Virus record (IMG/VR): IMGVR_UViG_3300024259_000010
Span: 1-64,000 of that record
Length of the DNA stretch: 64,000 bases
Strand: one strand, 5' to 3'
The notes under the pieces are model-generated. The model was not told the origin of the DNA, searched no databases, and saw nothing but the letters and a program-made list of their open reading frames with translations. Below are positions 1-53,390 of this stretch, piece by piece. The stretch's first letter is position 1; each line of letters opens with the position of its first letter. A program made the position numbers and the translations under genes.

Positions 1-328
1 TGCTTTACCTAAACCTTTATCAGCTTTCTTAATTCCTTTAAGAGCCAGACCAGGTAATGATCTATCAAACATCTTCTTACCGAATTTGCCAATAGCTTTA
101 CCAGCTTTAGATCCAGCGATCTTTCTAGCACCCATACCAACAAGACCACCAGTTGCTAAGAACTTACCAGTCTTTTTGAGAGCAGCTTTAGGATCATCAA
201 TTGCTTTACCTAAACCTTTATCAGCTTTCTTAATTCCTTTAAGAGCCAGACCAGGTAATGATCTATCAAACATCTTCTTACCGAATTTGCCAATAGCTTT
301 ACCAGCTTTAGATCCAGCGATCTTTCTA
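1..328. repeat. Exact 127-bp direct repeat (1-127 and 202-328, period 201 nt = 67 codons)
   Basis: Base-by-base comparison of the two copies. Confidence 0.95.
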
Positions 329-3300: not shown

Positions 3301-5442
3301 ATCACCAGATGCACCTGAAATATAAGATGCTAGATCTGATAGTAAGAATACATCTTTCTTAGCTAACTTACCAGCAGCGGTTTTAATACCGGATGGGATA
3401 TTCTGAGCAAATTTTGAATTGGTAAAATTCTCACGATCTTCTCGATAGATCATGCTTAAATCTTTTGTCTGTTGAGCTGCTCCACTTAGATAACTACCTG
3501 GATCATCAGAAAGAGAACTTTCTGCAATATTCAAACGTTCTTTATTGAGAGCATCTGTGGAAAACTGTCCACCATCTATATCATCAGCAAAAAGATTATA
3601 TGATCCAAATGTTTCCAATGTACTAGATAGTTTAGTTCTTAATGTATCATTAGCATGTGCATTATGAATACCATCATTGATAAAACTTATGTTTTCATTA
3701 TTTTTAGTACCATCAGGATTAAAATATAACGCCTTGATTAACTGGATAACTCCAATAGGGTCTTTAGTACCCTTCATCAATAATTTAATACCTCGTCCGG
3801 TCAGCTCTTCTGGTTTACTAGCAGCAGTTGCTTCTTTGATAACCCTTGCACTAATAGTAACACCATTGACAACAGCGTTGTTAATAACGATCAATAAATC
3901 TGCTTCTAATTCTTTATATGTGGATTCCTTGACAGTTGACGTCATTGCAGCTATACCTTTGATAGCACCCAATGATTCTACCATGGCTTGACCACGTTCT
4001 TCAGGAGCACCAAGCATAGATTCCATCACAGAAGCTTTAGCCTGAGTCATTGAAACGATTTTACGTTTCTTGGGATCATATGCTTCTATTTCAGTATCAG
4101 TACCAGTAACACTATCTCTAGTATTTTTAGCAATTTTAGATAACCATAGAGGTATGACTTCAACAATAGATTGACGAGTAGCGTTATCAAATACAGAGGC
4201 AGTTGCTCCTTCTTCAAATAATTGATTACCAACATCTACATGTGTCGTCTTCTTGGGTATCATGCTTCCGATTAATTTCAAAGCAATATTATCGGATTCA
4301 CTCAACGCATCGGCAAAGTCACGACCACCAGTTTTAATCTTACCTTGAACAGTTCTTGCTGTTCTATCGGCAACGTTAGCAATAGGTCTTATTTTATTAA
4401 GAGCAGATCTCCCACCGATCATACCAAGTATTGTACCAAGTGGACCACCGGCTTTCTCGCCTTTGCTTTTACCCATACCCAATTGATCAAAGTCGCCTTC
4501 CATGTCCCTTTCGACTTCCATGCTATCAATGAGCATATCGAGCATAGGAGCTAACTGTCCAATGTTATCAACCACATTTGATTTAAATCCTTTGGCAGCG
4601 CCTCCTACCATACCACTAATAGAATTAACACCAAGATCTGCAATCTTACCACGAACACTATGTTTTAAAAATTCAGCTGATTGTGCTTTTGCAACTTCAG
4701 GTAAGGCAGTGTTCTTACTAACAATAGCGATATTGTCTTCGAACGATTGTGCAAATACTTTCAATACACCAAGAGTTTCTTTAGAAGTATATAAGTGCAT
4801 ATACTTTAACTCAAGCATTTTCTTCATCCAGTCCTGCTGAGCAGAAACTGTATATTGATTTGAAAATTCTAACTGTGAGTTAATATTGGATAACATTCCA
4901 ATAGTGCTTCTATGTCTCAGTGAGTCACGGGCTTTGTCAACTAACTTATCAGCCCGAGCATGTTCATCTTTTGTCTTATTGGTACTAGCTATATTTGCAA
5001 ACATAGCTTCAGATGAAGCTCGTGCTACATTCTGTGCTTCAGAATATGCATCCTCAGCTTCAGCACCCGTTGATTCAGAAGAGGATTTGGAAAACTCTTC
5101 TAGCTTATTATACATGCCTTTTGGAATGAATCGTTTAGCAGTAGGTAAAGCAAATGCGGTAGCACGTTTTCCAACAATGGCAGCCTTACGTACTTCAGCA
5201 CGTAGTTCACCGAGTGATTCAACACCTATATCTTTTGCAGCACCTATGTCGCTTAATAACTCAGATGTATTAGGCATTGAACTTAAAATATGTTTACCAG
5301 CAGTTTTCATTCCAGCAGGTACACCTGCTTTAACTAAGTCTTTGGCATTGGAACCCAATCCCATTACTGGTTTTCTAGATTTAGGATCTATTGAATCAGA
5401 TGAATAATTACTGCTGAAATCATCAGCCATAAAACTATCCAT
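1..5442 (-). CDS. Large tail/tape-measure protein, phiKZ gp181-like (C-terminus beyond the window, >1814 aa)
   Basis: ATG at 5442 (alternative 5430). The frame was translated or spot-checked by hand to position 1 with no stop seen; it is absent from the ORF track because its stop is outside the window. Ala/Gly/Lys-rich, with FDNATRQSIVEVIPLWLSKI and VDVYIKDE segments resembling phiKZ gp181-type proteins, and a hydrophobic segment PFLLPALAVAGVAVGGVILA. Confidence 0.75.
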   Translation of the reverse strand, partial: MDSFMADDFSSNYSSDSIDPKSRKPVMGLGSNAKDLVKAGVPAGMKTAGKHILSSMPNTSELLSDIGAAKDIGVESLGELRAEVRKAAIVGKRATAFALPTAKRFIPKGMYNKLEEFSKSSSESTGAEAEDAYSEAQNVARASSEAMFANIASTNKTKDEHARADKLVDKARDSLRHRSTIGMLSNINSQLEFSNQYTVSAQQDWMKKMLELKYMHLYTSKETLGVLKVFAQSFEDNIAIVSKNTALPEVAKAQSAEFLKHSVRGKIADLGVNSISGMVGGAAKGFKSNVVDNIGQLAPMLDMLIDSMEVERDMEGDFDQLGMGKSKGEKAGGPLGTILGMIGGRSALNKIRPIANVADRTARTVQGKIKTGGRDFADALSESDNIALKLIGSMIPKKTTHVDVGNQLFEEGATASVFDNATRQSIVEVIPLWLSKIAKNTRDSVTGTDTEIEAYDPKKRKIVSMTQAKASVMESMLGAPEERGQAMVESLGAIKGIAAMTSTVKESTYKELEADLLIVINNAVVNGVTISARVIKEATAASKPEELTGRGIKLLMKGTKDPIGVIQLIKALYFNPDGTKNNENISFINDGIHNAHANDTLRTKLSSTLETFGSYNLFADDIDGGQFSTDALNKERLNIAESSLSDDPGSYLSGAAQQTKDLSMIYREDRENFTNSKFAQNIPSGIKTAAGKLAKKDVFLLSDLASYISGASGDVPISVDADGTIRIETPEYSNVAGSSSGDFYGPMPEMVGPMPQQTIKQMAMGTGKNTFDRAKHGVKQGVKKAKGLYSNTSSDPDFIGPMPSAGMSAKRKAIGIGNSAKDKALGAGKSVVDAVDTQLNKTPDELRADLTRSKKKVGSLIKELNKAAELDPDEDPSVINRVKKINSVIMKEISKVVSEEDQDKLMKTVDATNASVREKLTKYRTVSKDFYDKNISSHVTKARSGIETAQIKGMYAGDKIASGAETLAIKSMYGFDSLKKGAVSLKDQALGAIGTVQDKTIGSSRLLLEMKSFHKSFRVFAKTGSLEGYDDDDMIKDTKWEITKSLTRRAKDSIKSGGGKLGRTIGGVATTYGKGLKGAGKWLADKTGQAAPHIGSALGTGVGKLGDLAGILAKGGSDIAGSGLDMMGEFYKGGFGLAKSLVDKVPGLAVQPNFVDVYIKDEVKVGSPLVSAKVQKKNGLVAETKKRLKKTIEITSPIIHSETGDVLVSEEDIEKGLVTVSGKSIYDGAGGGIHIDLGGAFAGAGGLLSSGLNVLSGGVGVYGSILKGAGKAGLGAMGYAKDKLSDMGFGSGGIAAKVEELTAAVNENHSTMYELLNTRLGATTGEPTTTSPTIGSTGKAGAGVTASKTNPMDDEGSADDAEDDYEEDVHRKGSYLDQMRAKAEGRGIKVPANMTDAKGMLKGGMQNLANKPGLLGKIGSAGMGISAAIDTGNTLKGLNDARKLKKAAKLAKAGKNAKNLGKLGKFGKIGGALGRFGSKAAGLATMIPGAGAIGGGLATAGTALAGAGAAAGTAIAGAAAAAAPFLLPALAVAGVAVGGVILAKKLKKRRARKKAEKAQKMAAGAYADQQLDNWVDTLTEKNASKKFIKKFKSLFKAGKRDEAENMANKFMTAKADGKLNPEDVESKDKEEWEAGQKAEEEGIENEGAFAKFKKTKFGKVAGFMATGGLAGMAARGIAGKIKNSKLGKSKLGKFVLGGGLVGMAGRKIAGSKAGKAIGKFGKKMFDRSLPGLALKGIKKADKGLGKAIDDPKAALKKTGKFLATGGLVGMGARKIAGSKAGKAIGKFGKKMFDRSLPGLALKGIKKADKGLGKA

Positions 5443-5461
5443 ATTCTCTTCTTTAAACTTA

Positions 5462-6259
5462 TTATTTTTCATAAGTAATATCCATTATTACAAACTTAAA
5501 ATCACAAAATGCATTGAATACAATTTCAGTATTCTGCAATATCTGATCATCAGTTAATTTTTCGTCACCAGGCTTAACATCTTGCACTTCCTCAATAAAT
5601 GGAAATGTATGTAGTGATTTATGTACAAGTAATGTTCCAGCTTCTAGCAGAGGTTGAAATCTCCCGTGCTCCATAAACTTACCCAATTTATAGATAGACA
5701 TGTGGTCTAGGGTTGTTACAATCTCTTCACCATAATCATATATTTGGGGATCAGTTATAGTGATGTTCCAATATGACAATTCTTTTTTAAGACAAGCGAT
5801 TAATTTATCCTTACCTTCAAGTGACAATTTAACATCACCTGATCCGATGAATAGTTGAGGTACAACATTAGCATCACTACCCATTCTATTATTACCTAAA
5901 ACAGCATCGCCGAATTTAAAAAAGTATTTATAATAATCAGTAGGTGGGCTAATACGTTCTAGCTTTGCATGATTATCAGTGTCTTGCATAAATGCATATA
6001 TATCTTCATCTGTAAATTTTAGTTTAGGGAAATATTTCATAACTTTATCTTCTCTGCGATCATTATAATTCGACAGATTAGCTAGTAGATAATCATACTC
6101 TTCTTTGCTAGATATAAGACTCAATAATGCACCTATTCTAAAATCAAAAAAACAATCCAGATCAACATACAGCACACCTACTGGTGCAACTATATCTTCC
6201 ATTGCTGCACCGGCTATTGATTGTAATGAGGCTGCCACATCTCCAGACATTTTTTCCAT
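5462..6259 (-). CDS. Conserved phiKZ-like hypothetical protein
   Basis: ORF; GGAG RBS before ATG 6259; LYVDLDCFFDFRIGAL resembles a motif common in phiKZ-like phage proteins. Confidence 0.65.
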   Translation of the reverse strand: MEKMSGDVAASLQSIAGAAMEDIVAPVGVLYVDLDCFFDFRIGALLSLISSKEEYDYLLANLSNYNDRREDKVMKYFPKLKFTDEDIYAFMQDTDNHAKLERISPPTDYYKYFFKFGDAVLGNNRMGSDANVVPQLFIGSGDVKLSLEGKDKLIACLKKELSYWNITITDPQIYDYGEEIVTTLDHMSIYKLGKFMEHGRFQPLLEAGTLLVHKSLHTFPFIEEVQDVKPGDEKLTDDQILQNTEIVFNAFCDFKFVIMDITYEK

Positions 6260-6382
6260 AATTTCTCTCCGTTTTTTATCCATATAATGGGCTTTATTGA
6301 CATTTTTTAAAAACATAAATAATCATTTAATGTACTATAATTATAAAAATTTTTAGATTACAAAATATTAAAGGAGATTGTC

Positions 6383-6739
6383 ATGGATATTACAGAGGTA
6401 CAAGAAAAAGAATTATTAACAGATAGATTCACTAAACGTTATTCAAGTGTTAACTCACTTATTACATTTTTGATTGCTACCGATGATTATATTACAGTGG
6501 GCGATATTTTGGATGTTGTAAATAACCAAGGGCAGTTCGAATACTTGGACGACGCTGATATTGAAATGGTAGTAGGGTTTGATAAACCTGCTTCTGATAA
6601 CCAAGTTTTATTCGCATTAGTAGATCTTGAATCATGGGGTCTTATTGAAAATATTAAGACTATGGAAGATGGAGTGGAAGTTACTTACATTCGGTGGGGA
6701 ACTAATGATAAAGGTGAACTTCCTACTGTAGCTGAATAA
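6383..6739 (+). CDS. Hypothetical protein
   Basis: 118-aa ORF with AAGGAG RBS. Confidence 0.8.
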   Translation: MDITEVQEKELLTDRFTKRYSSVNSLITFLIATDDYITVGDILDVVNNQGQFEYLDDADIEMVVGFDKPASDNQVLFALVDLESWGLIENIKTMEDGVEVTYIRWGTNDKGELPTVAE

Positions 6740-6740
6740 T

Positions 6741-7070
6741 ATGAAATTTATAATTTGCACAATGATGGATGCTGAGCCGATGACAAAATCTGAGGCTCAG
6801 ATGAAAATCCACGGTAAAGAATTACCAAAGGATGTGTTAGATGAGGATGGGTATTTGGTTAGCTATCCTAATGATCTATCAACTTGGTATAACAAAGAGT
6901 CTTTCTTAAGAAAAGCTTTCCCATTGAATGATGGCGATATGATAACAACTGAGGATGTAAATAAGTTTCATGAAACCTCCACATATTTCACTGGAGATAA
7001 GACTATGACAACACATGTCTTAAATGTTATAATGAAATGGACGAGAGGCACATTGTTTAAAAATAAATAA
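6741..7070 (+). CDS. Phage hypothetical protein (AEPMT...GYLVxY..W domain)
   Basis: 109-aa ORF; motif resembles a widespread small phage domain. Confidence 0.65.
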   Translation: MKFIICTMMDAEPMTKSEAQMKIHGKELPKDVLDEDGYLVSYPNDLSTWYNKESFLRKAFPLNDGDMITTEDVNKFHETSTYFTGDKTMTTHVLNVIMKWTRGTLFKNK

Positions 7071-7128
7071 TTTTGATTAATAGTATACCTAGTATATATA
7101 AGTGGATATCTCATGTCTATTATAAGTA

Positions 7129-7136
7129 TATATTAC
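7129..7136 (+). promoter_or_regulatory. phiKZ-type early promoter TATATTAC
   Basis: Exact match to the published phiKZ early promoter consensus; intergenic, upstream of a plus-strand gene; one of 19 copies found. Confidence 0.8.
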
Positions 7137-7181
7137 TTTTTTGTATCAATGAATATAAACTATAATCAAAAGGATATCCGT

Positions 7182-7646
7182 ATGGATGACAATAAATTAA
7201 ATATTATTAAAGATGCGATTAAAACTGTTGTTGAAGCTGAAGTTGGAGTAGATGTTCTATATCCTATTTTATTTACTACTAAATTTGGTATTGATCGTAA
7301 AGTGGCTGCGCTTGCATACACTATGCGTGTTGATAAAGAAGAACTTGTTTCCATCTTACCTAAGCGTGCTGAAGGAGAAGGTGTTAATGCTAGAGCATCT
7401 ATTGCGGTTCTTGTGGAGCTAATCAGAAAAGCACGTGGTTTTGAACCTAAGCCTGCAAAGGTTAAGACAGATAAACCTACTGAGGAAAAACCAGTAACAC
7501 ATAAGTGTGACTGTGGTGCCTGTATGTGTGATAAGGATCATAAATCTCTTGGGGGAGATGATGACTCTATTGAAGAAGGTATTCCTCTGACCGCAGATAA
7601 TGCATCTTTACCAGAAGAAAAGGAAGCTGAACTTATTGCTGAATAA
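7182..7646 (+). CDS. Hypothetical early protein
   Basis: AAGGA RBS before ATG 7182; downstream of the promoter. Confidence 0.75.
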   Translation: MDDNKLNIIKDAIKTVVEAEVGVDVLYPILFTTKFGIDRKVAALAYTMRVDKEELVSILPKRAEGEGVNARASIAVLVELIRKARGFEPKPAKVKTDKPTEEKPVTHKCDCGACMCDKDHKSLGGDDDSIEEGIPLTADNASLPEEKEAELIAE

Positions 7647-7730
7647 ATATGTATGAACAGCCACCATTTAACCATATAAGATTGTCAAATAAATGTTTCA
7701 TAGAACAGGGGTGATTTAAGATAGAAAGTA

Positions 7731-7814
7731 GGCCGCATGGCGGAATGGCAGACGCAACGGTCTTAAAAACCGTTTTCTTCGGAAGTGTGAGTTCGACTCT
7801 CACTGTGGCTACCA
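7731..7814 (+). tRNA. tRNA-Leu(UAA)
   Basis: Acceptor GGCCGCA/TGTGGCT, D arm GCGGAATGGCAGACGC, anticodon arm ACGGT-CTTAAAA-ACCGT, long variable arm, TTCGA T loop, encoded CCA. Confidence 0.95.
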
Positions 7815-7819
7815 ACTAT

Positions 7820-7875
7820 CTTAAAATCTGTCGACTATTGCAGTCGTGTCGGTTCGATTCCGGCCTTGGGTACCA
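7820..7875 (+). pseudogene. Orphan 3' half of a second tRNA-Leu(UAA)
   Basis: CTTAAAA loop, variable arm, T arm GTCGG-TTCGATT-CCGGC, CTTGGGT-A-CCA; no matching 5' half nearby. Confidence 0.75.
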
Positions 7876-7893
7876 AAATGTTATTCTAGTTAA

Positions 7894-8384
7894 GTCGGAG
7901 CGTAACGTTATACATTAATTAGTAGCGATAGGACGCTAAGACAAAACTACGATGAAACTCACAAGCTGATAAACCAGAGTATATTCCTTTCTATGATTTG
8001 GAATGAATTGATACTAGATATGTCTGGTTGTTTTATCTATTACGATGATATCTTAAGATTGATTCGTGATGCATTTATTATAATCCTAAAGGATCTTATG
8101 ATAGATGTAAAGACCTGATCGCAGATCCAAAAGATGGGCGCGATTTGGGCAACCCAGCCAAGAATGCAACTGCTTGGTGTCGTTTGACTTAATAGACGGG
8201 TTATATACGTCATGTGTTGTGGTAACGGTTCTATGGACGCATAGACTGGTCGACGGTGGTTCCGGTTATAACCAAGGATTGAGAGGGAAGATGTGGGTGC
8301 CAATGTTATCAAGGATTATTGCAATACGTTGTAGTGATCAGATATTACGCATCATTCGAACACGCCCCTACCTCGCTCTCCGAC
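7894..8384 (+). ncRNA. Candidate ~490-nt structured ncRNA (RNA-A), family unassigned
   Basis: 5'/3' closing helix, many internal hairpins, terminator directly after; only weak short ORFs overlap. Confidence 0.6.
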
Positions 8385-8391
8385 CTTTTTA

Positions 8392-8428
8392 AATACTTCT
8401 ACCTCAATCGGGTAGGAGTATTCTTTTT
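8392..8428 (+). terminator. Rho-independent terminator
   Basis: TACTTCTACC/GGTAGGAGTA stem plus T-rich tail. Confidence 0.8.
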
Positions 8429-8467
8429 ATATCTGTTATCAAATTAATCAATAAATAAGGAAGAACA

Positions 8468-8725
8468 ATGGCTAAGAAGAAAGAACAAGGACCAAGAATT
8501 TCAGCATGTGGTACACATAAACACATGATCAATGAACGCTTAACTGAAGCTGTTATCAATGAAGGCAAGATCGTATGTAAAGACTCTAAAGGTTTTTATG
8601 TAACTACTGCTCGTGAAATTGATAGTGGTCTTATGGACCCTAATCGTCAGAAGTGTACTCGTGTGCGGGATAATGAACTCGCCGCTGAAGGTATTGTTAT
8701 CGGTACTACTCATAATGCAGATTAA
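8468..8725 (+). CDS. Hypothetical protein
   Basis: 85-aa ORF, AAGGAAG RBS. Confidence 0.75.
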   Translation: MAKKKEQGPRISACGTHKHMINERLTEAVINEGKIVCKDSKGFYVTTAREIDSGLMDPNRQKCTRVRDNELAAEGIVIGTTHNAD

Positions 8726-8843
8726 AGAAGTATGGGATAAATGCGCCCAAGAAGAAAAAGATAAGCTTTTTAAAATAGGATGGTTTTCTTTAATAGGAAT
8801 TCTTATTGCATGTGGTGCACTTGTTATATTTTACAAAGGATAG
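8715..8843 (+). CDS. Small membrane protein (42 aa)
   Basis: ATG 8715; hydrophobic segment GWFSLIGILIACGALVIF. Confidence 0.55.
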   Translation: MQIKEVWDKCAQEEKDKLFKIGWFSLIGILIACGALVIFYKG

Positions 8844-8846
8844 TTT

Positions 8847-9389
8847 ATGAAAATAGAAATACTCACACCATTATTAGTACGCTGTCGCCGATATGGAATC
8901 TCATTTGATTATGGATGGGATGATGAAACTGATACATACAGATTAAAGCTATTCATAAATAAGACTAAAGTATATGATACTGGTCCGACTATGGAAATAG
9001 AAGCTGGTGTGCAGGAAGCTATTAAACGCATTGATAAAGAAAATGAAAATGGTGATCTTAATAACCATACTAATGTTATCGATGCTACTATTAATGTAGA
9101 TAAAGAAGATTCTGAGTTATTCCACAAGATCAAGGAAACTATTGGATTCTTACTTGGTGTACCTGAGAAAAAGATTACATTGAAATCAAGTATCGTAGAA
9201 GATCTTAAAGCTAATTCATTGGATTCAGTTGAATTGATCATGCAGATTGAAGAAGACTTTGGTGTTACTATCTTGGATGAGGACGCTGTTAAAATTAAGA
9301 CAGTGGAAGATATCTATAATTGGGCGGTAGCATATGGCTCACCTAGTTGTCGAGTACTTGCTGTAACTAAGATAACCAAAATAGATTAA
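8847..9389 (+). CDS. Acyl carrier protein domain fused to an unknown N-terminal domain
   Basis: EDLKANSLDSVELIMQIEEDFGVTILDEDAVKIKTVEDI matches the AcpP consensus except DSL is NSL. Confidence 0.85.
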   Translation: MKIEILTPLLVRCRRYGISFDYGWDDETDTYRLKLFINKTKVYDTGPTMEIEAGVQEAIKRIDKENENGDLNNHTNVIDATINVDKEDSELFHKIKETIGFLLGVPEKKITLKSSIVEDLKANSLDSVELIMQIEEDFGVTILDEDAVKIKTVEDIYNWAVAYGSPSCRVLAVTKITKID

Positions 9390-9446
9390 TTAAGAATATG
9401 CAAATCTTGCTTTCAAAAAGTGAGTTTAATAATTTATATCCCTGAG

Positions 9447-9830
9447 TATAATAAGTTGGTTATGCGGATTGCTTGTTTGCGGTCGGCCTGCTTATAACTA
9501 ATTGGGGTATATAAAATCCATGATGTACCGGCGTATCCTTCGGGGTACATTACCCACGTCATGGTCTAGTATATTGATTACTTGTTATTGTAACCCATAC
9601 GAGGGTTATTAGAGTATACGGTATCATGTTGATGATTCCTTGCCTGAAGACGGGCAAGTGGAGACAGTACTAAACAATATGCAAACCAGTAAACAGTCTG
9701 GCAGAACGGGGAGCAACTAGCCCGCCAGATGAGGACCTATACATTATTTATAGGAGGGTCGGGAGCAGTGGCCTTTTAAATCACTATCATGAAAAACAAT
9801 GATAGCACTGCCACCAATTTATTGATTATA
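9447..9830 (+). ncRNA. Candidate ~385-nt structured ncRNA (RNA-B), family unassigned
   Basis: 11-bp closing helix (9450-9460/9813-9823), at least 7 internal stems, no ORF of 60 aa or more on either strand, terminator follows. Confidence 0.65.
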
Positions 9831-9870
9831 AGATACTACTGGATTGTCCAGTAGTATCTTATATATTTTT
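9828..9870 (+). terminator. Long hairpin terminator
   Basis: Perfect 16-bp IR ATAAGATACTACTGGA/TCCAGTAGTATCTTAT plus T-rich tail. Confidence 0.8.
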
Positions 9871-9893
9871 TAAAAATTAAAAAGGAGTATTAT

Positions 9894-10181
9894 ATGAAAT
9901 ATGTAATTGTAAATGATGGATGGGATACAGACCCAGTACCATGTGCTCATGTCTTCTCAGAAGAGATTGGTCACAAAATGGTTGTGGATATGAATACCCA
10001 AGTTATGAGCGCAGGTTTCTGTAATGTAGTGGACGGTCGAATGATTGTTCAAGTTGGTCGTCCTTCTGATTCATTAAATATTGGACCTGCACCTAATGAT
10101 GGAGATCTTCTAACAAAATTAATCCTCCAAGGCAAAGAGCCTATGGATATTGTACGTGAGCGAAGGGATGCTAATGAATAA
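9894..10181 (+). CDS. Hypothetical protein
   Basis: 95-aa ORF, AAGGAG RBS. Confidence 0.8.
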   Translation: MKYVIVNDGWDTDPVPCAHVFSEEIGHKMVVDMNTQVMSAGFCNVVDGRMIVQVGRPSDSLNIGPAPNDGDLLTKLILQGKEPMDIVRERRDANE

Positions 10182-10695
10182 AATAACTAAAATGAAATTA
10201 TGTGTATGGTGGTTCCATCGTGGTCAGAAATATGGTGAGTTGCCATACACATTCCACTTAAATCAATGTTTTGATAGACTACTTGGTTTACACTGTGTAG
10301 ACGTAGATCTACTATGTGCTATGCTTGGTCATGATCTATTTGAAGATACGAAATGTTATTATGCATTTGTTGAAAAACATTTTGGATATCGTGTAGCAGA
10401 GTTGATCAAGGGTATGACTAAGAGTCAAGGAGCTGATTATACGAAGTATGTCAAATCTATTACAAAGAGGACTGAATATCGTAAGGATGTTATGATCCTT
10501 AAAATGATTGATAATATTTGTAACCATACTAATAGTTACATGACTCGTGACCGTAGACGTATGACTAAGTATGAAGGTTCGTTAGGTATATTGCGAGAAA
10601 CATGTGATATGTTATTACATACCAAATCTATATCTGAAATGGATGCGTTACATCAGTTAATAGCGTCTATGGCAGTCCCGACAATTGAGGAATAA
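10174..10695 (+). CDS. HD-domain hydrolase, RelA/SpoT (Mesh1 / small alarmone hydrolase)-like
   Basis: HRGQKYGELPYTFH, GHDLFEDT and KMIDNICN match SpoT-type HD motifs. Confidence 0.8.
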   Translation: MNKITKMKLCVWWFHRGQKYGELPYTFHLNQCFDRLLGLHCVDVDLLCAMLGHDLFEDTKCYYAFVEKHFGYRVAELIKGMTKSQGADYTKYVKSITKRTEYRKDVMILKMIDNICNHTNSYMTRDRRRMTKYEGSLGILRETCDMLLHTKSISEMDALHQLIASMAVPTIEE

Positions 10696-10712
10696 ATTAA
10701 AGAAAGAAAAAT

Positions 10713-10952
10713 ATGAATGATCATGAAATTTTATTAAAACATTATACCATACGTAGAGGTAGTAATGTAATATTCTTTATAATGAATGGTATGTTCACAT
10801 TAGGGTTTGCATATTTATTACCTGCGATAACGGTTGAGTATAATCCAATCACACCATTACCATGTATGCTTGTATGTATATATTTTGGTATAAAGTATAT
10901 ATATACTAATCGTATATGTAAAGAATTAACGAATAAATTAAAAGGAATATAA
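10713..10952 (+). CDS. Membrane protein (2 TM)
   Basis: 79-aa ORF with two hydrophobic segments. Confidence 0.7.
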   Translation: MNDHEILLKHYTIRRGSNVIFFIMNGMFTLGFAYLLPAITVEYNPITPLPCMLVCIYFGIKYIYTNRICKELTNKLKGI

Positions 10953-10953
10953 T

Positions 10954-11358
10954 ATGAAAATTACTGGAGAAATGAAGTCCAAAATAGTATTTGGATTAAT
11001 TATATCAGTATGTGTATTAATTGGAGTATATTGTCTGATCAATATTAATCTCCCATCGAGTGATACTGTTATTTATCGTGTCTCAAACTTGGTAGAAGAA
11101 ACATCACGTGATGTATCATCTACTAGTCGTAAAGAAATTATCGACATGTATGAGATTGAATTAAATAAAGGCATTGCATTAGTTGAAGATATTATTGTCG
11201 AAGAGGAAGTAACCTTCTCTCACCGATGGAGATATAAGAGATTAATGGATAGACTTGAAACAGTTGATAAACTAGATCGACTATATATAGATCTTGCCAG
11301 TATGCAAGAATCAGTTTCTCATTGTAGGATTACGAGGAAACATGTTGAAAAAGAATAA
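10954..11358 (+). CDS. Membrane-anchored hypothetical protein
   Basis: 134-aa ORF with an N-terminal TM segment. Confidence 0.7.
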   Translation: MKITGEMKSKIVFGLIISVCVLIGVYCLININLPSSDTVIYRVSNLVEETSRDVSSTSRKEIIDMYEIELNKGIALVEDIIVEEEVTFSHRWRYKRLMDRLETVDKLDRLYIDLASMQESVSHCRITRKHVEKE

Positions 11359-11476
11359 ACAATCATGTGGTAGATGTGGTGGACAACTACCAAACCGATG
11401 TTATATCAATTAATATCAGATGGTGTCAAGTTCTGTATACCAAAGAAATATAAGTAATTCATTTAGTTTTTAAGTA

Positions 11477-11484
11477 TATATTAC
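11477..11484 (+). promoter_or_regulatory. Early promoter TATATTAC
   Basis: Exact motif, intergenic. Confidence 0.8.
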
Positions 11485-11525
11485 TTTATTGCAATCTGGA
11501 CATAACTTCAGAGGAGGAATAAATT

Positions 11526-11630
11526 ATGAGTAAATTATATGACGATGACCCATTGGACACTACTAATTATACACCATCTGACGATGACCGTCAAGATGAA
11601 CAACAAGATGGCGAAGACGCTTTGGATTAA
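11526..11630 (+). CDS. 34-aa acidic micro-protein MSKLYDDDPLDTTNYTPSDDDRQDEQQDGEDALD
   Basis: Strong GAGGAGG RBS right after the promoter; below the ORF-track cutoff. Confidence 0.65.
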   Translation: MSKLYDDDPLDTTNYTPSDDDRQDEQQDGEDALD

Positions 11631-12497
11631 ACTCGTTTGGGTGAGTATAAACCGATGTGGATCGGACTCTGTAAATCAAACAACAATATGTAAGTCACTA
11701 GTACACGGTATCATTCCAGTGAGTAGGTGGCTATAAACAGTTAGAAATATCTGTAGCTCGAAACTATGAGCAGAGCATATGTTGATGTATGTAAGAGTAG
11801 CTTATTAGGCCCAACAGCGTTGAGAGAAGAGTTACCTACCACTTACCTAGTGGATGGACGAACCTACCAGGTTCAAACTTCTCTCAGGATAAGAATCACC
11901 TATGTTGTGTTATGAACTGCCTGTACCTAATCGGGTGGATTGTAACATAACCTCTAATAACGTCGAAAGACTTGATCTATTATAGATCAACGGGAATAAC
12001 TAAGAGTAGGGGATAAGTCTGCTATAAGGACTCTTAGAAAAACCTGTGTCATCTTGATGCCTTATCGAGATGGTTGTGTGATGCTTTAACCGGGAGACTT
12101 AGAAGGAATATCTATGTCAGATCAGCAAGCGGTTAAGGTTTAAATATAGATGCTCATTAAGCACAAGGTGATAGCTTCATCTATGTGAGCAGTTGGTTAT
12201 TTCAAGAGTTGGAGTTTAGCGAGTTAGCACTTATCGTGTGAGCGTTTGCTCCAACCCTTGACCTATTTTATAAATCTCTTGATCTTTAATAATGATGTGG
12301 TACTTGTATACCAAATGTTTATGTCATTGTTATTGATCGGGCTCCACGTCTACGTCCTTTCATACTACGTAACGTCGGGTTAAGTAAACACAAAAAGAGA
12401 GAGTAAATCCTAGCCCTGGTTAGGTTGAGTCATCAGTGGATATTACAATAAGTTCTAAACATTGTAGTTGTGATATCCTGTTTCGGCACCTGATGAC
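11631..12497 (+). ncRNA. Candidate giant (~870 nt) structured ncRNA (RNA-C), family unassigned
   Basis: At least 15 stems with G-U pairs and nested multi-stem domains; no ORF of 60 aa or more from 11737 to 12590; ends in a terminator. Confidence 0.72.
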
Positions 12498-12526
12498 AAG
12501 AAACTTCTAATAGTTTCTTTTTTTTA
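12498..12526 (+). terminator. Rho-independent terminator
   Basis: AAGAAACT/AGTTTCTT plus poly-T. Confidence 0.75.
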
Positions 12527-12547
12527 ATTTCATGTGTTATTTAGGTA

Positions 12548-12555
12548 TATATTAC
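12548..12555 (+). promoter_or_regulatory. Early promoter TATATTAC
   Basis: Exact motif, intergenic. Confidence 0.8.
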
Positions 12556-12590
12556 TTTTATGAGAAAGCATTTTAAATGAAAGGAATACT

Positions 12591-12923
12591 ATGCGTAGAA
12601 AACATAAACTTAAATTACAAAGAAAATTCTCTATTATAGATAGATTATTATATCGTAAAGTATTTAACTGTAATGATTCCAAATTAGTACTTGTTGATAT
12701 GGTCACCGCATGTATTAAGTATCGTAGTGAAATATTGAAGTTATATAAACTGGCTAAGATACAATGTGATTATGAATTTACTATGGAGCAACCAGAATCT
12801 CTAGAAGGTCTATATAATGAATTATGTTATATATCAGATCGATTTGGATGCATACATCGTATACAATTGATGTTAAATACACCAGAGTACTATGATAATT
12901 TAAACACGATGTTGGAGGAATAA
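12591..12923 (+). CDS. Hypothetical protein
   Basis: 110-aa ORF, AAGGA RBS. Confidence 0.75.
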   Translation: MRRKHKLKLQRKFSIIDRLLYRKVFNCNDSKLVLVDMVTACIKYRSEILKLYKLAKIQCDYEFTMEQPESLEGLYNELCYISDRFGCIHRIQLMLNTPEYYDNLNTMLEE

Positions 12924-12925
12924 CT

Positions 12926-13255
12926 ATGTCATTAGTAACACCATATGTAGATGAGAAAACACAGAAGCTTCATATACTACGATCTCTAATAATGAATTAC
13001 TATGCTGTTGAAGGTCATGGTACAGGTGGTAGTTTACATATTGTACTAGATGATCATAATTACGAACGCACTCATATTAAATTCTGCCTGGATGAGGCTA
13101 AGAAATGTAAAGATCTTATGGGTATTGAAATAGCAACTCGTATGCTTGAGTTCTCTGATGAAGAGAATAAAGTATTGGTAGAAACAGGTTGGGAAATTGA
13201 TGAGTTAATAGGTAGTTCATATAAAGCAGCCTACATCATGGCATATAAGAAATAG
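12926..13255 (+). CDS. Phage hypothetical protein (GGSLHIVLDD motif)
   Basis: 109-aa ORF, GGAGG RBS. Confidence 0.75.
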   Translation: MSLVTPYVDEKTQKLHILRSLIMNYYAVEGHGTGGSLHIVLDDHNYERTHIKFCLDEAKKCKDLMGIEIATRMLEFSDEENKVLVETGWEIDELIGSSYKAAYIMAYKK

Positions 13256-13269
13256 AAAGTATTGAATAG

Positions 13270-13773
13270 ATGGAAATAAAGATACACTACGATTTTACAG
13301 ATGGTACTGAACTTAGTTATGTAGAAGGTCTTGAAGCTATTGATTTAAATCTAAGCTTTACTACTAACTGCTTTGAGTTCTTTACCTCTGATAGATCATG
13401 TGAAGTGATTGTAGAGAAAGCCAGTGGTCGTTATATATCTATGCAGGAAGTTCTTGCTAATGATAATTTTTATACACGTAAGCATATTCGTAAGGCACAT
13501 AACCTACGCAAGATGTTAGTAGCTGGTGGTTTTAAATGGAAGGGTGATATAATTTCCCCTAACCAACAGATGATAAATACTATAGACCCTCTTATACTTA
13601 ATCAGTTTAACGATACAGAAGGACGTGGATTGAAAGACCATGAGATTGGTGCATTGGTAAATGTATTATCTATACATCTTAGTAAGTATATTAAGTTGGG
13701 TTTCTTACGAGAAGCTATATCAACTGTAACTAAGAAGTTTCTTAATGACACAGGACTTAGATATAACAATTAA
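13270..13773 (+). CDS. Phage hypothetical protein
   Basis: 167-aa ORF. Confidence 0.75.
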   Translation: MEIKIHYDFTDGTELSYVEGLEAIDLNLSFTTNCFEFFTSDRSCEVIVEKASGRYISMQEVLANDNFYTRKHIRKAHNLRKMLVAGGFKWKGDIISPNQQMINTIDPLILNQFNDTEGRGLKDHEIGALVNVLSIHLSKYIKLGFLREAISTVTKKFLNDTGLRYNN

Positions 13774-13784
13774 AGGAAACACCA

Positions 13785-14372
13785 ATGATACAAAGTATTA
13801 CATTTGCAAAGGAACTCTTTTGTTTCAAAGTAGGAGATTCATATGACTTCAAACCATTAACATTATTGGTCGGAGATCAAGGGTGTGGTAAAAGCACTAT
13901 ACTGAATCTATTGGGTAAGCAAGGTATGTATGGTAGTACGCAAATGGTAAACATTGAAGTTGGTAAGAATGACAATGGTTTCATTCACCATGATTTTGAA
14001 ATGGCTAGTCATCGTACTAATACTAGCGGACCAAATCCATACTCACCTGATTACAATGACCAGTTGATTAGAATGATTGATTCTAAGTCTATGTCTCACG
14101 GTGAAGCCACTAAGGTTTCCTTTGAAGATTTTGATAGAATTGAAACAGATATTCTTATATTGGATGAACCCGATATGTCACTGTCTATGCGAAGTGTACA
14201 TATGTTAGTGGAACATGTTAAACGATGGATTGATTCAGGTAAGCAAGTTATCTTGAGTTGTCATCATCCGTATCTTATAGAAGCTTTTGATGAAGTATTA
14301 TCCTTGGAACATAAACAATGGATGTCATCTAAAGAATTTATAGAATCACATAATTTAAAGATGGACCTGTAG
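13785..14372 (+). CDS. ABC/AAA-type ATPase
   Basis: Walker A GDQGCGKS, signature-like SHGE, Walker B ILILDEP, H-loop SCHH. Confidence 0.88.
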   Translation: MIQSITFAKELFCFKVGDSYDFKPLTLLVGDQGCGKSTILNLLGKQGMYGSTQMVNIEVGKNDNGFIHHDFEMASHRTNTSGPNPYSPDYNDQLIRMIDSKSMSHGEATKVSFEDFDRIETDILILDEPDMSLSMRSVHMLVEHVKRWIDSGKQVILSCHHPYLIEAFDEVLSLEHKQWMSSKEFIESHNLKMDL

Positions 14373-14439
14373 CTCAGTTGGTCAGAGCAGGACACTCATA
14401 ATGTCTTGGTCGGGGGTTCAAGTCCCTCCGGGTCCACCA
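14363..14439 (+). tRNA. tRNA-Ile2(CAU) (lysidine type; elongator Met not excluded)
   Basis: Acceptor GGACCTG/CGGGTCC, anticodon arm GGACA-CTCATAA-TGTCT, overall pattern like E. coli ileX, encoded CCA. Confidence 0.9.
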
Positions 14440-14632
14440 ACTTTTAGACAACACTAAGTATCGGCGAGAGAACGGTGTGGGGGAACAACACTATATAAGT
14501 GCCCTCTGTCTATTTCAATTTTATTGATAATACTAATCCAAACTTCAAATATATAAAAAAGAGAGATAGGGTTAGGTTACATGAAACGAAAGGTATAAAA
14601 CTAAATCAATAAATAGAAACAAAGGAAACAAC

Positions 14633-14935
14633 ATGAGCGAACAAACAAAGAAATACCCACGACATCATATCACACTCAGCGACGGATCTTTATTATCATT
14701 ATCTGTTAATAAGAATCCGATACCTGATTGGGAACATATTGTGGAGGCATTTCCTAAAATCGTAAATACTGTAACTTTGGGAGAACTTGTCAAGAGGATT
14801 GATGATATCAATACCGACACGGTAGAGTATCACAATACTATTGATGAGGCTACTGATAAGTTCACTGGTGCAGGTGAAGAATATTACCTGTACACTGATT
14901 CATGTGATCGTCAACAACGCGTTGACGTGAGTTAA
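14633..14935 (+). CDS. Hypothetical protein
   Basis: 100-aa ORF, AAGGA RBS. Confidence 0.75.
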   Translation: MSEQTKKYPRHHITLSDGSLLSLSVNKNPIPDWEHIVEAFPKIVNTVTLGELVKRIDDINTDTVEYHNTIDEATDKFTGAGEEYYLYTDSCDRQQRVDVS

Positions 14936-14942
14936 TCAAAAC

Positions 14943-14976
14943 GTAGTCACTCTCCCTTAATTGGGAGAGTGACTAC
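14943..14976 (+). terminator. 14-bp hairpin, probable terminator
   Basis: GTAGTCACTCTCCC/GGGAGAGTGACTAC. Confidence 0.6.
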
Positions 14977-15001
14977 ACCTATTTAATCGAATGGAGATAT
15001 T

Positions 15002-27360: not shown

Positions 27361-27425
27361 GTAAACCATAAATCATTTTATCCCACCGGATACTAGAATC
27401 AAGGAAATCTACATTTAAATTAATA

Positions 27426-27468
27426 ATAAGACACTACACCGTAATGGTGTAGTGTCTTATATTTTTTT
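27426..27468. terminator. Bidirectional terminator hairpin at a convergent junction
   Basis: ATAAGACACTACACC-GTAAT-GGTGTAGTGTCTTAT. Confidence 0.85.
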
Positions 27469-47886: not shown

Positions 47887-47894
47887 TTAAATTA

Positions 47895-47940
47895 AATATA
47901 AGATACTACACCGTAATGGTGTAGTATCTTATATTTTTTT
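47895..47940. terminator. Bidirectional terminator hairpin at a convergent junction
   Basis: 18-bp IR with GTAAT loop. Confidence 0.85.
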
Positions 47941-52879: not shown

Positions 52880-53308
52880 GGGCCTGCCTGGTTTCGACAG
52901 TACAATGGAATTCATAACTACAAGTAGAGGATGATCGTCGGCCTCTTTAAACATCGGTCAACAATTAGTTGGAACGAAAGTGATCAACTTCCCTAGTGCT
53001 CGCGCTCTTGCAGCGTAATCACGTCCCTTTTAATTAAGGGAGGGCTTGAGGATACCTAGAATTCTCTGGGATGAAGTATCTTCTAACTTAGGTATACCCA
53101 AAGAGGTGTGCTTAATACAATTAAGCAGAGAGCCCTATAGCAGCAATGCTATTTAAATAGTTAGGATCACTATATGGAAAAGAGATCTGAGTGTGAGTAG
53201 TGCTGTATATACTATTTGGTTTACTAGTAAAGTAAAACTAGGTAAAAACTTGTAACAACGTTATGTTGGAAATTATATTGGACGAGGGTTCGACTCCCTC
53301 CAGGTCCA
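52880..53308 (+). ncRNA. ssrA: tmRNA; tag (A)GTKVINFPSARALAA at 52971-53018
   Basis: 5' GGGCCTGCCTGGTTTCGACAG; 3' GGACGAGGGTTCGACTCCCTCCAGGTCCA with a G3-U wobble; P2 pairings TACAAGT/ACTTGTA and ATAAC/GTTAT; internal ORF ending ALAA-stop. Confidence 0.95.
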
Positions 53309-53390
53309 AATCCACAATAATTACTGCCTCCACGCGGCGTGGGTTGGATACTATACTTAGGTATAGGCTAAATGTAATAAGAAAGGAATA

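What the first reader, a model, noticed from the sequence alone, without database searches (positions are those of the whole stretch)
9447..9862. RNA-B: ~385-nt RNA with an 11-bp closing helix between the ACP gene and a long terminator
AATAAGTTGGT (9450-60) pairs with ACCAATTTATT (9813-23). Internal stems: ATGTACC/GGTACAT (9523-50), AACCC/GGGTT (9592-607), TTGCCTG-AAGA-CGGGCAA (9640-57), CTGG+CGGG/CCCG+CCAG (9698-728), CCTATA/TATAGG (9736-54) and GCAGTG/CACTGC enclosing CTATCAT/ATGATAG (9765-811). There is no ORF of 60 aa or more over about 500 bp. The size is RNase-P-like but the GAGGAAAGUCC core is absent.
Basis: partly seen in the sequence, partly recalled or inferred. Interest (0 to 1): 0.75.

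Follow-up and report, generated by a model that had tools for sequence, protein, structure and literature searches.

The report
Orphan structured non-coding RNA in phage
A 440-base stretch with no gene in it, lying between an acyl-carrier-protein gene and a strong transcription terminator in an uncultured marine phiKZ-like giant phage, probably makes a folded RNA of unknown function, but it has no relatives anywhere, so this could not be tested by comparison.

Summary
Window 9390-9893 is truly non-coding. All six frames are full of stops, no ribosome-site-led ORF lies on the + strand, and no protein family matches. A 17-bp intrinsic terminator (9827-9863 plus a T-run) ends it. A diverged relative keeps that hairpin through two compensatory double changes.

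The body is GC-rich: 0.44, against 0.35 for genes and 0.28 for intergenic DNA. It folds better than shuffles on the + strand only (z -2.1 to -4.1; - strand about -0.6). This is about 1.9 SD beyond this genome's coding background.

Five local hairpins are robust.

No Rfam family matches. The genome has no RNase P core in the region, no reverse transcriptase and no TnpB.

No homologue or paralogue turned up in phage, viral, metagenome or genome collections, or in the three nearest relatives. No RNA-seq run was listed as holding it.

The host genome is a distant phiKZ-like jumbo phage. RNA-B sits in an early operon, in the stop-codon-to-terminator slot where this phage otherwise keeps tRNAs.

Best reading: a stable, terminator-capped non-coding RNA or structured 3' UTR. 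This is plausible but unproven, and of moderate interest.

The parts
8847..9389 (+). Upstream gene: 180-aa protein with an orphan N-terminal ~90 aa and a C-terminal acyl-carrier (PP-binding) domain. RNA-B begins at its stop codon.
   Evidence: PF00550 E 1e-9 and phrog_5934. An exhaustive HMMER search finds only ACP-domain matches and no orthologue.
9390..9446 (+). AT-rich spacer after the ACP stop. It holds a small hairpin (9406-9424) and a direct repeat, TGAGTTTAATAATTT (9421) / TGAGTATAATAAGTT (9443), carrying -10-like boxes. No terminator and no phage-type promoter lie here.
   Evidence: The sigma-70 scan finds no + strand promoter.
9450..9460 (+). In longer transcripts it pairs locally with 9485-9495 instead.
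9518..9564 (+). Hairpin domain: a 9-bp outer stem, 2 bp, then a 6-bp stem capped by a cUUCGg tetraloop (9533-9548).
   Evidence: Pair probability 0.96-1.00 in all four contexts; MFE helices.
9579..9616 (+). Hairpin: 5 bp plus 7 bp (GTAACCC/GGGTTAT) with a 6-nt loop.
   Evidence: p 0.89-1.00.
9636..9662 (+). Hairpin: 3 bp plus 8 bp (CTTGCCTG/CGGGCAAG), loop AAGA. A strain variant carries an extra G after 9659.
   Evidence: p 0.96-0.98. The indel comes from run X4 (table 4).
9663..9695 (+). A/C-rich linker, mostly unpaired or weakly paired in the alternative folds.
9696..9730 (+). Hairpin: 7 bp (GTCTGGC/GCCAGAT), a 5' bulge, 3-4 G-C pairs and a ~10-nt loop.
   Evidence: p 0.83-0.89 for the outer part and ~0.6 for the inner part.
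9734..9760 (+). Ambiguous segment: either a local hairpin (CCTATA/TATAGG or GACCT/GGGTC) or the 3' strand of a long-range helix with 9483-9506.
   Evidence: p 0.1-0.4; alternative MFEs.
9765..9811 (+). Two-tier hairpin: 6 bp plus 7 bp. The 13-nt internal loop is on the 5' side only, so the 3' strand is continuous. It is followed by C and ACCA (9813-9816), which gives a tRNA-minihelix-like look. This was not tested.
   Evidence: p 0.68-0.91 for the outer stem and 0.99 for the inner stem; sequence.
9813..9823 (+). In the diverged relative L039, positions 9816 and 9822 differ; the partner arm was not available.
9827..9873 (+). Intrinsic terminator: a 17-bp perfect hairpin, loop TTG, then TATATTTTTT. 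It is the 3' boundary of the unit.
   Evidence: dG -22.8. L039 keeps it through 9829/9861 T-A to A-T, 9842/9848 G-C to A-T and 9838/9852 A-T to G.T.
9894..10181 (+). Downstream gene (95 aa, no family). Its ribosome site begins 18 nt after the terminator stem, and no promoter lies between them.

Best explanation
RNA-B is a non-coding, folded RNA segment made as the 3'-terminal part of an early transcript of a marine phiKZ-like jumbo phage.

Proposed route. Transcription starts at a phage TATATATTAC-type promoter upstream; the nearest is at about 7129. It runs through the ACP gene, continues without a stop signal into 9390-9826, and ends at the hairpin plus U-tract at 9827-9873.

The ~440-nt stretch folds co-transcriptionally into a chain of stable local hairpins rather than one globule closed by an 11-bp helix. 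I propose that the terminator hairpin protects the 3' end, and that the segment persists either as the 3' UTR of the ACP message or, after cleavage, as a free ~380-480-nt stable RNA. That RNA would act in trans early in infection, most plausibly by binding protein as a scaffold or decoy.

Shown: the stretch is non-coding; it has the strand, composition and excess strand-specific structure described; the terminator is real and maintained; no internal terminator or promoter separates it from the ACP gene; and it occupies the slot this phage otherwise gives to tRNAs.

Inferred: that it is transcribed, that it is stable or processed, and what it does.
For: 1. Non-coding. Stops break all six frames. 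No SD-led ORF lies on the + strand. No Pfam or PHROG match was found for any stop-free piece. A natural 1-nt insertion after 9659 occurs in another seawater sample.

2. Composition. Body GC is 0.438, against 0.350 +/- 0.039 for genes, 0.277 +/- 0.069 for 141 intergenic gaps, and 0.408 for the phage's own tmRNA.

3. Structure. + strand z is -3.05 to -4.08 (500 shuffles) and -3.15 for 9390-9826. The - strand gives -0.5 to -0.7. The tmRNA control gives -3.47 and the ACP coding sequence +0.17. 21 of 129 MFE pairs are G.U. Five hairpins keep p of 0.6 or more in four different contexts.

4. Position. In this genome the median distance from a + strand stop codon to the next intrinsic terminator is 17 nt (41 cases). 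The outliers are 746 nt (holds tRNA-Leu), 384 nt (holds tRNA-Arg), 432 nt (small ORFs with ribosome sites) and 438 nt (RNA-B).

5. Terminator. It is kept by compensatory changes in relative L039.

6. Transcription context. More than 40 copies of a TATATATTAC motif lie 45-50 nt upstream of start codons. The motif equals the published phiKZ promoter consensus TATATTAC (PMC7058600). The phage encodes RNAP beta- and beta'-like proteins. The copies flanking RNA-B are at 7129 and 11477, so RNA-B lies inside a promoter-to-promoter unit.

7. Precedent. phiKZ-like phages do make small non-coding RNAs (PMC11512511).
Against: No transcript evidence: none of the listed RNA runs holds the stretch.

No covariation: every copy recovered is 100% identical. 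No homologue was found by blastn against 50,697 phage records, by 18-31-mers in IMG/VR, JGI metagenomes and GTDB genomes, or in the three nearest relatives by blastn or by a covariance model of 9516-9664.

The folding excess is only about 1.9 SD beyond the genome's own coding windows. The body alone ranks 911 of 4958 in a composition-regressed genome scan.

No dedicated promoter was found.

The overall architecture is unstable: two folds within 5 kcal/mol differ in all long-range helices.

The strains seen are nearly clonal everywhere outside 9770-10700, so the identity of RNA-B across samples says nothing about selection.
Confidence: 0.45

Rival explanations
1. RNA-B is a purely cis-acting element: a long structured 3' UTR or attenuator. 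It either shields the ACP message from 3'-to-5' decay or tunes how much transcription reads through the 9827-9863 terminator into the promoter-less downstream genes (9894-11358).
For: No promoter motif lies between the terminator and the next ribosome site, so the downstream genes need read-through. Several body segments are complementary to the terminator's arms: 9682-9691 with 9837-9846, 9491-9502 with 9821-9832, and 9567-9575 with 9830-9838. The internal loop 9772-9781 is 9/10 complementary to the downstream ribosome-site region 9876-9885.
Against: Terminators followed directly by a ribosome site with no promoter are common in this genome and carry no long leader. Examples are 15694, 39915, 69433, 90177, 151300 and 207058. 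So read-through does not need a 440-nt element. By my estimate, the complementarities are short, AT-rich and within chance expectation. No fold replaces the 17-bp hairpin (p 0.95-0.97). No known riboswitch or leader family matches. In L040 the homologue of the downstream gene sits behind unrelated coding DNA, with no such element.
Confidence: 0.25
2. RNA-B is a functionless spacer: a decayed remnant of a gene, intron or RNA gene, or a recombination scar, in a fast-evolving early region. Its hairpins and GC content would be leftovers or chance.
For: It is an orphan, with no homologue or paralogue at any level. It lies in a region with unusually many ORF-free gaps (1661-2163, 3992-4344, 7815-8467, 11737-12590). 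That region is also rich in strain-level indels and cassette replacement (table 5). The folding excess is modest against the genomic background.
Against: Typical spacers in this phage are 27-28% GC and about 110 nt long, whereas this one is 44% GC and 440 nt. The structure excess is strand-specific. No trace of a protein family remains in any frame. No Rfam family is hit even at E <= 10. No strain contig lacks the region: no joint skips it.
Confidence: 0.22
3. RNA-B is a diverged member of a known RNA class: RNase P RNA, a group I or II intron, tmRNA, ROOL/GOLLD, a riboswitch, a retron msr-msd, or a TnpB/IscB guide RNA.
For: Its size resembles RNase P RNA or tmRNA. The end-to-end inverted repeat resembles retron a1/a2 repeats. 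It lies near tRNA genes, as ROOL and GOLLD often do (my own knowledge).
Against: No Rfam 15 family reaches even E = 0.05 in the body with permissive filters; the hits listed lie on the terminator hairpin. No RNase P CR-I motif is present. The genome has no reverse transcriptase and no TnpB zinc-ribbon domain. The flanking ORFs are complete genes with their own stop and start, so there are no exons to join.
Confidence: 0.04

Closest known systems
Small non-coding RNAs of phiKZ-like jumbo phages (11 sRNAs mapped in 201phi2-1 by ONT-cappable-seq, one conserved in phiKZ, EL and PA3; PMC11512511)
   Same: Same broad phage group: TATATTAC-type promoters and phage multisubunit RNAP. They are non-coding transcripts bounded by intrinsic terminators, some beside tRNA genes, and of unknown function.
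   Different: Those RNAs were filtered to under 250 nt. Most come from 5' UTRs by premature termination, and all have mapped 5' and 3' ends. RNA-B is about 380-480 nt, lies 3' of a coding gene, has no mapped ends and shows no sequence similarity to any record searched.
Stable RNAs 'species 1' and 'species 2' (bands C and D) of phage T4, encoded in and co-transcribed with the tRNA gene cluster (my own knowledge; not checked in a paper here)
   Same: Phage-encoded stable RNAs of unknown function that share transcription units with tRNAs and are released by processing.
   Different: The T4 RNAs are about 120-140 nt and partly tRNA-like, and their existence is shown biochemically. RNA-B is three times longer, is separated from tRNA-Leu by a terminator and two genes, and is untested.
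ROOL and GOLLD large ornate RNAs (Rfam RF03087, RF01998)
   Same: Large structured non-coding RNAs found in phages and prophages, often near tRNA genes, with no known function (my own knowledge).
   Different: They are about 580 and 800 nt and are defined by extensive covariation. RNA-B is shorter and matches neither model, even at E <= 10. It has no family at all.
3'-UTR-derived bacterial sRNAs that share the mRNA's intrinsic terminator (e.g. CpxQ, SroC; my own knowledge)
   Same: The layout is the same: coding gene, non-coding tail, then one shared terminator. The RNA can be released by endonuclease cleavage without a promoter of its own.
   Different: Those sRNAs are 50-150 nt and act through a short seed together with Hfq or ProQ. 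RNA-B is far longer, is mostly paired, and no target is known.

Membership tests
Bacterial RNase P RNA | Conserved P4 core, including the CR-I sequence GAGGAAAGUCC | tested here: not met
   No match in 9390-9893 with up to 2 mismatches. The 12 matches elsewhere in the window equal chance.
Bacterial RNase P RNA | Match to the Rfam RNase P covariance models | tested here: not met
   No hit at gathering score, at E <= 10 on 9300-9950, or at E <= 1 on 1-15000.
Group I / group II self-splicing intron | Match to the catalytic-core models, and interruption of a gene whose exons join in frame | tested here: not met
   No Rfam hit. The ACP ORF ends with its own stop after a complete PP-binding domain. 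The next ORF has its own ribosome site and start codon behind a terminator.
ROOL / GOLLD / HEARO / OLE large bacterial and phage RNAs | Match to the family covariance model | tested here: not met
   No hit at E <= 10 with permissive filters.
Retron msr-msd RNA | Flanking inverted repeats (a1/a2), with an adjacent reverse transcriptase gene | tested here: not met
   An end-to-end inverted repeat exists (9450-60 / 9813-23). But no RVT_1 domain occurs anywhere in the 236-kb genome, and the neighbours are an ACP, a 95-aa protein and an HD-domain protein.
TnpB / IscB guide (omega) RNA | Adjacent or overlapping TnpB or IscB nuclease gene | tested here: not met
   No Cas12f1-like/TnpB zinc-ribbon domain in the genome. 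No HEARO hit.
Riboswitch / transcription attenuator | A known aptamer, and an alternative pairing that competes with the terminator | tested here: not met
   No aptamer family matches. The terminator keeps p 0.95-0.97 in every fold, and only short AT-rich complementarities to its arms exist.
Rho-independent (intrinsic) terminator (for 9827-9873) | G+C-containing hairpin immediately followed by a U-tract, with the hairpin maintained in evolution | tested here: met
   17-bp stem with 5 G-C pairs, a 3-nt loop and then a T-run. Two compensatory double substitutions and one wobble-compatible change are seen in L039.
Structured non-coding RNA in general | Covariation supporting the helices across homologues | not testable with these tools
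   No diverged homologue of the body could be obtained. L039 reaches only the last 9 nt.
Structured non-coding RNA in general | A transcript of defined ends | not testable with these tools
   No RNA run was listed as holding the stretch.

The most novel reading that the evidence does not exclude
RNA-B would be the first seen member of a new class of large (~400 nt) structured RNAs made early in infection by phiKZ-like jumbo phages. It would be one of several in an 'RNA island' of this marine phage, alongside the ORF-free stretch after tRNA-Leu (7815-8391) and a promoter-driven ~1-kb transcript with almost no coding content (11490-12527). It would have a specific tertiary fold and a trans-acting role in host takeover or counter-defence.
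Probability: 0.2. Interest if true: 0.65.

Novelty: new member of a known kind. Interest (0 to 1): 0.4.

Why it matters
Giant phiKZ-like phages run their own transcription and build a nucleus-like compartment. Their RNA biology is barely mapped, and the non-coding RNAs described in them so far are under 250 nt.

A 400-nt folded RNA expressed from an early operon would be a new kind of player in host takeover. It would also add to the short list of large bacterial and phage RNAs with no known function.

The practical value today is smaller. This is a well-delimited candidate with clear boundaries and five testable hairpins, in a phage that also shows at least one further long non-coding transcript unit. 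Without relatives or expression data it remains a lead, not a finding.

Tried and rejected
Homologue searches, all negative:
- blastn of 9390-9893 against 50,697 phage records.
- A 31-mer and an 18-mer against IMG/VR.
- An 18-mer against JGI metagenomes. It returned only the own record plus chance hits inside sulfatase genes.
- A 21-mer against GTDB genomes.
- Self-blast of the whole genome. Only look-alikes of the terminator hairpin appeared, at about 27420-27468 and 47887-47940.

Neighbour-gene routes:
- The ACP protein and the 95-aa protein have no relatives among 5.8 billion proteins.
- An exhaustive HMMER search with the ACP protein gives only ACP-domain hits. The contexts of P0003 and P0007 are unrelated bacterial DNA.
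- The HD protein gave one diverged relative. Its contig (L039) stops 9 nt into RNA-B. Its cluster mate L040 has different upstream DNA.
- A profile of the HD proteins found nothing in IMG/VR.

Relatives found through the phage RNAP beta subunit (G001-G003, 71/39/37% identity) hold no RNA-B. This was tested by blastn and by a covariance model of 9516-9664; the one weak blastn hit lies inside a gene.

Other copies of the same phage (L004, L005, and runs X2, X4 and X5) are identical.

Rejected readings:
- Small protein genes.
- A pseudogene.
- A tRNA with an intron. ARAGORN found only tRNA-Leu and one implausible call.
- A MITE or repeat. The element is single-copy.
- A replication origin. There are no iterons, and the skew minimum at 4-6 kb simply follows gene orientation.
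- A T4-like phage. There is no Gp23 and no Terminase_6 domain.

The shared 10-mer ACGGTATCAT between RNA-B and the 11.7-kb region is within chance expectation by my estimate.

Full report
WHERE THE WINDOW COMES FROM

The window is the first 64 kb of a 235,833-bp IMG/VR virus record. The record derives from seawater metagenomes. The genome is 34% G+C and about 90% coding, and most of its genes lie on the + strand. It carries three tRNAs and a tmRNA in the window.

A motif search of my own over the intergenic DNA found a strongly enriched element. TATATTAC, usually as RYATATATTACWT, occurs more than 40 times on the + strand, 45-50 nt upstream of start codons. It is often preceded by GTAGTTCA and by a terminator. 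TATATTAC is the published promoter consensus of phage phiKZ, and close variants are given for 201phi2-1 (PMC7058600, Table 2).

The genome also encodes two RNA polymerase beta-like ORFs and a beta'-like ORF. Its 1022-aa protein matches virion structural proteins of phiKZ-like Serratia, Klebsiella, Ralstonia and Vibrio jumbo phages at 23-27% identity. It has no T4-type capsid or terminase domains. I conclude that this is a distant, uncultured marine relative of the phiKZ-like jumbo phages.

THE OBSERVATION

The gap between the ACP-domain ORF (8847-9389; PF00550) and the next ORF (9894-10181) is 504 bp. Several results show it to be non-coding:
- Stops break all six frames.
- No Shine-Dalgarno-led ORF of 10 aa or more lies on the + strand.
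- None of ten stop-free pieces matches Pfam or PHROGs.
- A 1-nt insertion after 9659 is tolerated in another sample.

The terminator at 9827-9863 has 17 perfect pairs and a T-run. A diverged relative, ENA contig L039, was found through a 71%-identical HD-domain protein. It keeps the hairpin through two compensatory double substitutions (9829/9861 T-A to A-T; 9842/9848 G-C to A-T) and one A-T to G.T change (9838/9852). Only the apical pair is lost. The terminator is therefore real and under selection.

THE FOLD

Five hairpins are stable in every sequence context I tried, with pair probabilities of 0.6-1.0:
- 9518-9564, capped by a cUUCGg tetraloop
- 9579-9616
- 9636-9662
- 9696-9730
- 9765-9811

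CCTATA/TATAGG is marginal.

The headline 11-bp closing helix depends entirely on where the ends are put. Its probability is 0.98 for 9447-9826 and 0.00 for 9390-9875, 9460-9875 and 8847-9875, and forcing it costs 5.1 kcal/mol. In the longer contexts the 5' arm pairs locally with 9485-9495, and the region becomes a chain of four domains.

No promoter would place a 5' end at 9447-9450. The only -10-like box (9447-9452) would start the RNA inside the 5' arm. The nearest phage-type promoters are at 7129 and 11477.

IS THE FOLDING MORE THAN CHANCE?

Against dinucleotide shuffles, the + strand gives:
- z = -2.1 for 9440-9830
- z = -3.05 for 9447-9826, and -4.08 with pair span limited to 70 (500 shuffles)
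- z = -3.15 for 9390-9826

The - strand gives -0.5 to -0.9. As controls, the phage tmRNA gives -3.47 and the ACP coding sequence +0.17. Sixteen percent of the predicted pairs are G.U, which explains the strand asymmetry and argues for RNA-level rather than DNA-level structure. Most other long gaps in this genome are structured on both strands, because they hold palindromic terminators.

Two cautions apply:
- 40 random coding windows of the same length average z = -1.0 +/- 1.14 on the sense strand, and one of them is below -3.15. The strand difference seen for RNA-B is matched or exceeded by 3 of the 40.
- A composition-regressed sliding-window scan ranks the body without the terminator only 911th of 4958. 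The true tmRNA does no better in that scan.

The thermodynamic evidence is therefore suggestive, with an empirical p of roughly 0.03-0.05. It is not decisive.

COMPOSITION AND POSITION

The body has 43.8% G+C. This is 2.3 SD above both the genes (35.0 +/- 3.9%) and the intergenic gaps (27.7 +/- 6.9%), and above the tmRNA (40.8%).

Among 41 intergenic + strand terminators, the median distance from the preceding stop codon is 17 nt. The large outliers hold tRNA-Leu (746 nt), tRNA-Arg (384 nt), small ribosome-site-led ORFs (432 nt) or RNA-B (438 nt). RNA-B thus sits where this phage otherwise puts RNA genes.

WHAT IT IS NOT

- No Rfam 15 family reaches its gathering score in the window, except the tmRNA and the tRNAs.
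- With permissive filters and E <= 10, the best-scoring hits fall on the terminator hairpin; the few in the body are weak, with E above 1.
- The region has no RNase P core motif.
- The genome has no reverse transcriptase and no TnpB domain.
- ARAGORN with introns allowed finds nothing relevant.
- There are no iterons or tandem repeats, and the element has no second copy in the genome.

THE SEARCH FOR RELATIVES

This search took most of the effort and failed.
- The body has no blastn match in 50,697 phage records.
- It has no exact 18-31-mer match in IMG/VR, JGI metagenomes or GTDB genomes, beyond the own record and chance hits in sulfatase genes.
- The ACP and 95-aa neighbours are orphans.
- Other assemblies of the same phage are 100% identical.
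- Strain contigs from other seawater runs are identical over 9265-9687. They differ at positions that the tool did not print.
- Three relatives found through the RNAP beta subunit (71%, 39% and 37% identity) hold neither RNA-B nor an ACP orthologue. This was tested by blastn and by a covariance model of 9516-9664.
- L039 begins only 9 nt before the end of RNA-B. There, positions 9816 and 9822 in the 3' arm of the proposed closing helix differ, but the 5' arm was not available.
- L040 carries the homologue of the downstream gene behind unrelated coding DNA. This weakly argues against RNA-B being a dedicated leader for that gene.
- No RNA-seq run was listed as holding the stretch.

INTERPRETATION

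The best-supported reading is as follows. RNA-B is transcribed with the ACP gene as the tail of an early transcript. It folds into a string of stable hairpins and ends at a maintained intrinsic terminator. It persists either as a structured 3' UTR or, after cleavage, as a free stable RNA.

Its function is unknown. I favour a trans-acting, protein-binding role, at about 0.45. The rivals are:
- a purely cis role in message stability or terminator read-through (about 0.25);
- a functionless remnant in a fast-changing early region (about 0.22);
- a diverged member of a known class (about 0.04).

Internal terminators followed directly by a ribosome site are common in this genome and carry no long leader. 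This lowers the attenuator reading.

COMPARISON WITH WHAT IS KNOWN

phiKZ-like phages are known to make small RNAs. Eleven of under 250 nt were mapped in 201phi2-1, one of them conserved across genera (PMC11512511). Early phiKZ dRNA-seq predicted only one sRNA, which could not be confirmed by Northern blot (PMC8244752).

RNA-B is larger than these, lies 3' of a gene and shares no sequence with them. From my own knowledge it resembles, in layout only, the T4 stable RNAs of the tRNA cluster, terminator-sharing 3'-UTR-derived sRNAs, and the phage-associated ROOL and GOLLD RNAs. It fails the only testable membership criterion for ROOL and GOLLD.

I file it as a new, orphan member of the general kind 'phage-encoded structured non-coding RNA'. 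It is not yet verified.

VERDICT

The claimed closing helix should be dropped. The candidate is real enough to deserve a transcript test, but its present interest is moderate (0.4).

Noticed in passing
whole genome; window examples at 7129, 11477, 12548, 19423, 22326, 33719, 34867, 51315, 51839, 56155: More than 40 copies of a promoter-like motif (GTAGTTCA, then ~10 nt, then TATARRYATATATTACWT) lie 45-50 nt upstream of start codons, usually just after a terminator. The core equals the published phiKZ promoter consensus TATATTAC. With the RNAP beta-like ORFs (G000 209366-210277, 226326-227036) and the beta'-like ORF (167921-168082), this marks the record as a distant marine phiKZ-like jumbo phage.
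   Followed up: partly
window 11460-12527: A phage-type promoter (core at 11477) drives a unit of about 1 kb. It holds only a 34-aa very acidic ORF (11526-11630), followed by ~890 nt with no ORF, and ends at a terminator (~12499-12527) just before the next promoter (12548). The ORF-free part shows + strand-specific excess structure (z -4.3 and -3.9, against -0.9 and -2.6 on the - strand) and has no Rfam hit. It is a second and larger candidate non-coding RNA.
   Followed up: partly
window 7815-8422: After tRNA-Leu(UAA) (7731-7814) come ~580 nt without a credible ORF, at 40-48% GC, ending in a strong terminator (8392-8422). The first part (~7845-7878) looks like the T-arm plus acceptor 3' strand plus ACCA of a tRNA, but ARAGORN does not call it. 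Run X2 has a variant lacking 7894-8003. The folding excess is weak (z -1.6).
   Followed up: partly
window 9765-9816: The last hairpin of RNA-B has a continuous 13-nt 3' strand (7 + 6 bp stacked; the 13-nt loop is on the 5' side only). It is followed by C and ACCA, which is the topology of a tRNA acceptor/T-arm minihelix with an encoded CCA, though without a T-loop consensus. This could be chance (about 5% by my estimate).
   Followed up: no
window 9770-10700 and 10702-11350: Strain-level mosaicism. Contigs from other seawater runs are identical to the window nearly everywhere else, but differ by 6-16% from about 9770 to 10576. They replace 9925-10039 with 157 other bases, and one lacks 10703-11349. 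The ENA relative L039 carries an extra small ORF between the 95-aa and HD-domain gene homologues. The break begins inside the 3' end of RNA-B.
   Followed up: partly
window 9827-9863, 27426-27460, 47897-47933: Three long terminators share the same design and about 75% sequence identity (ATAAGAYACTAC ... GTAGTRTCTTAT). Several others in the genome begin TAAGA and end TCTTA. This looks like a family of related terminator hairpins.
   Followed up: no
window 8847-9116: The N-terminal ~90 residues of the ACP-domain protein match nothing in an exhaustive HMMER search of 1.84 billion representatives. Only the ACP domain (residues ~85-160) has relatives.
   Followed up: partly
window 52880-53309: The phage encodes its own tmRNA (Rfam 100 bits; tag peptide GTKVINFPSARALAA by ARAGORN). 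Like RNA-B, it has no phage-type promoter immediately upstream.
   Followed up: no
L040 1-438: In a JGI contig, the homologue of the 95-aa protein is the C-terminal part of a longer ORF of at least 145 aa that runs off the contig. This suggests a fusion or a different upstream module in that lineage.
   Followed up: no
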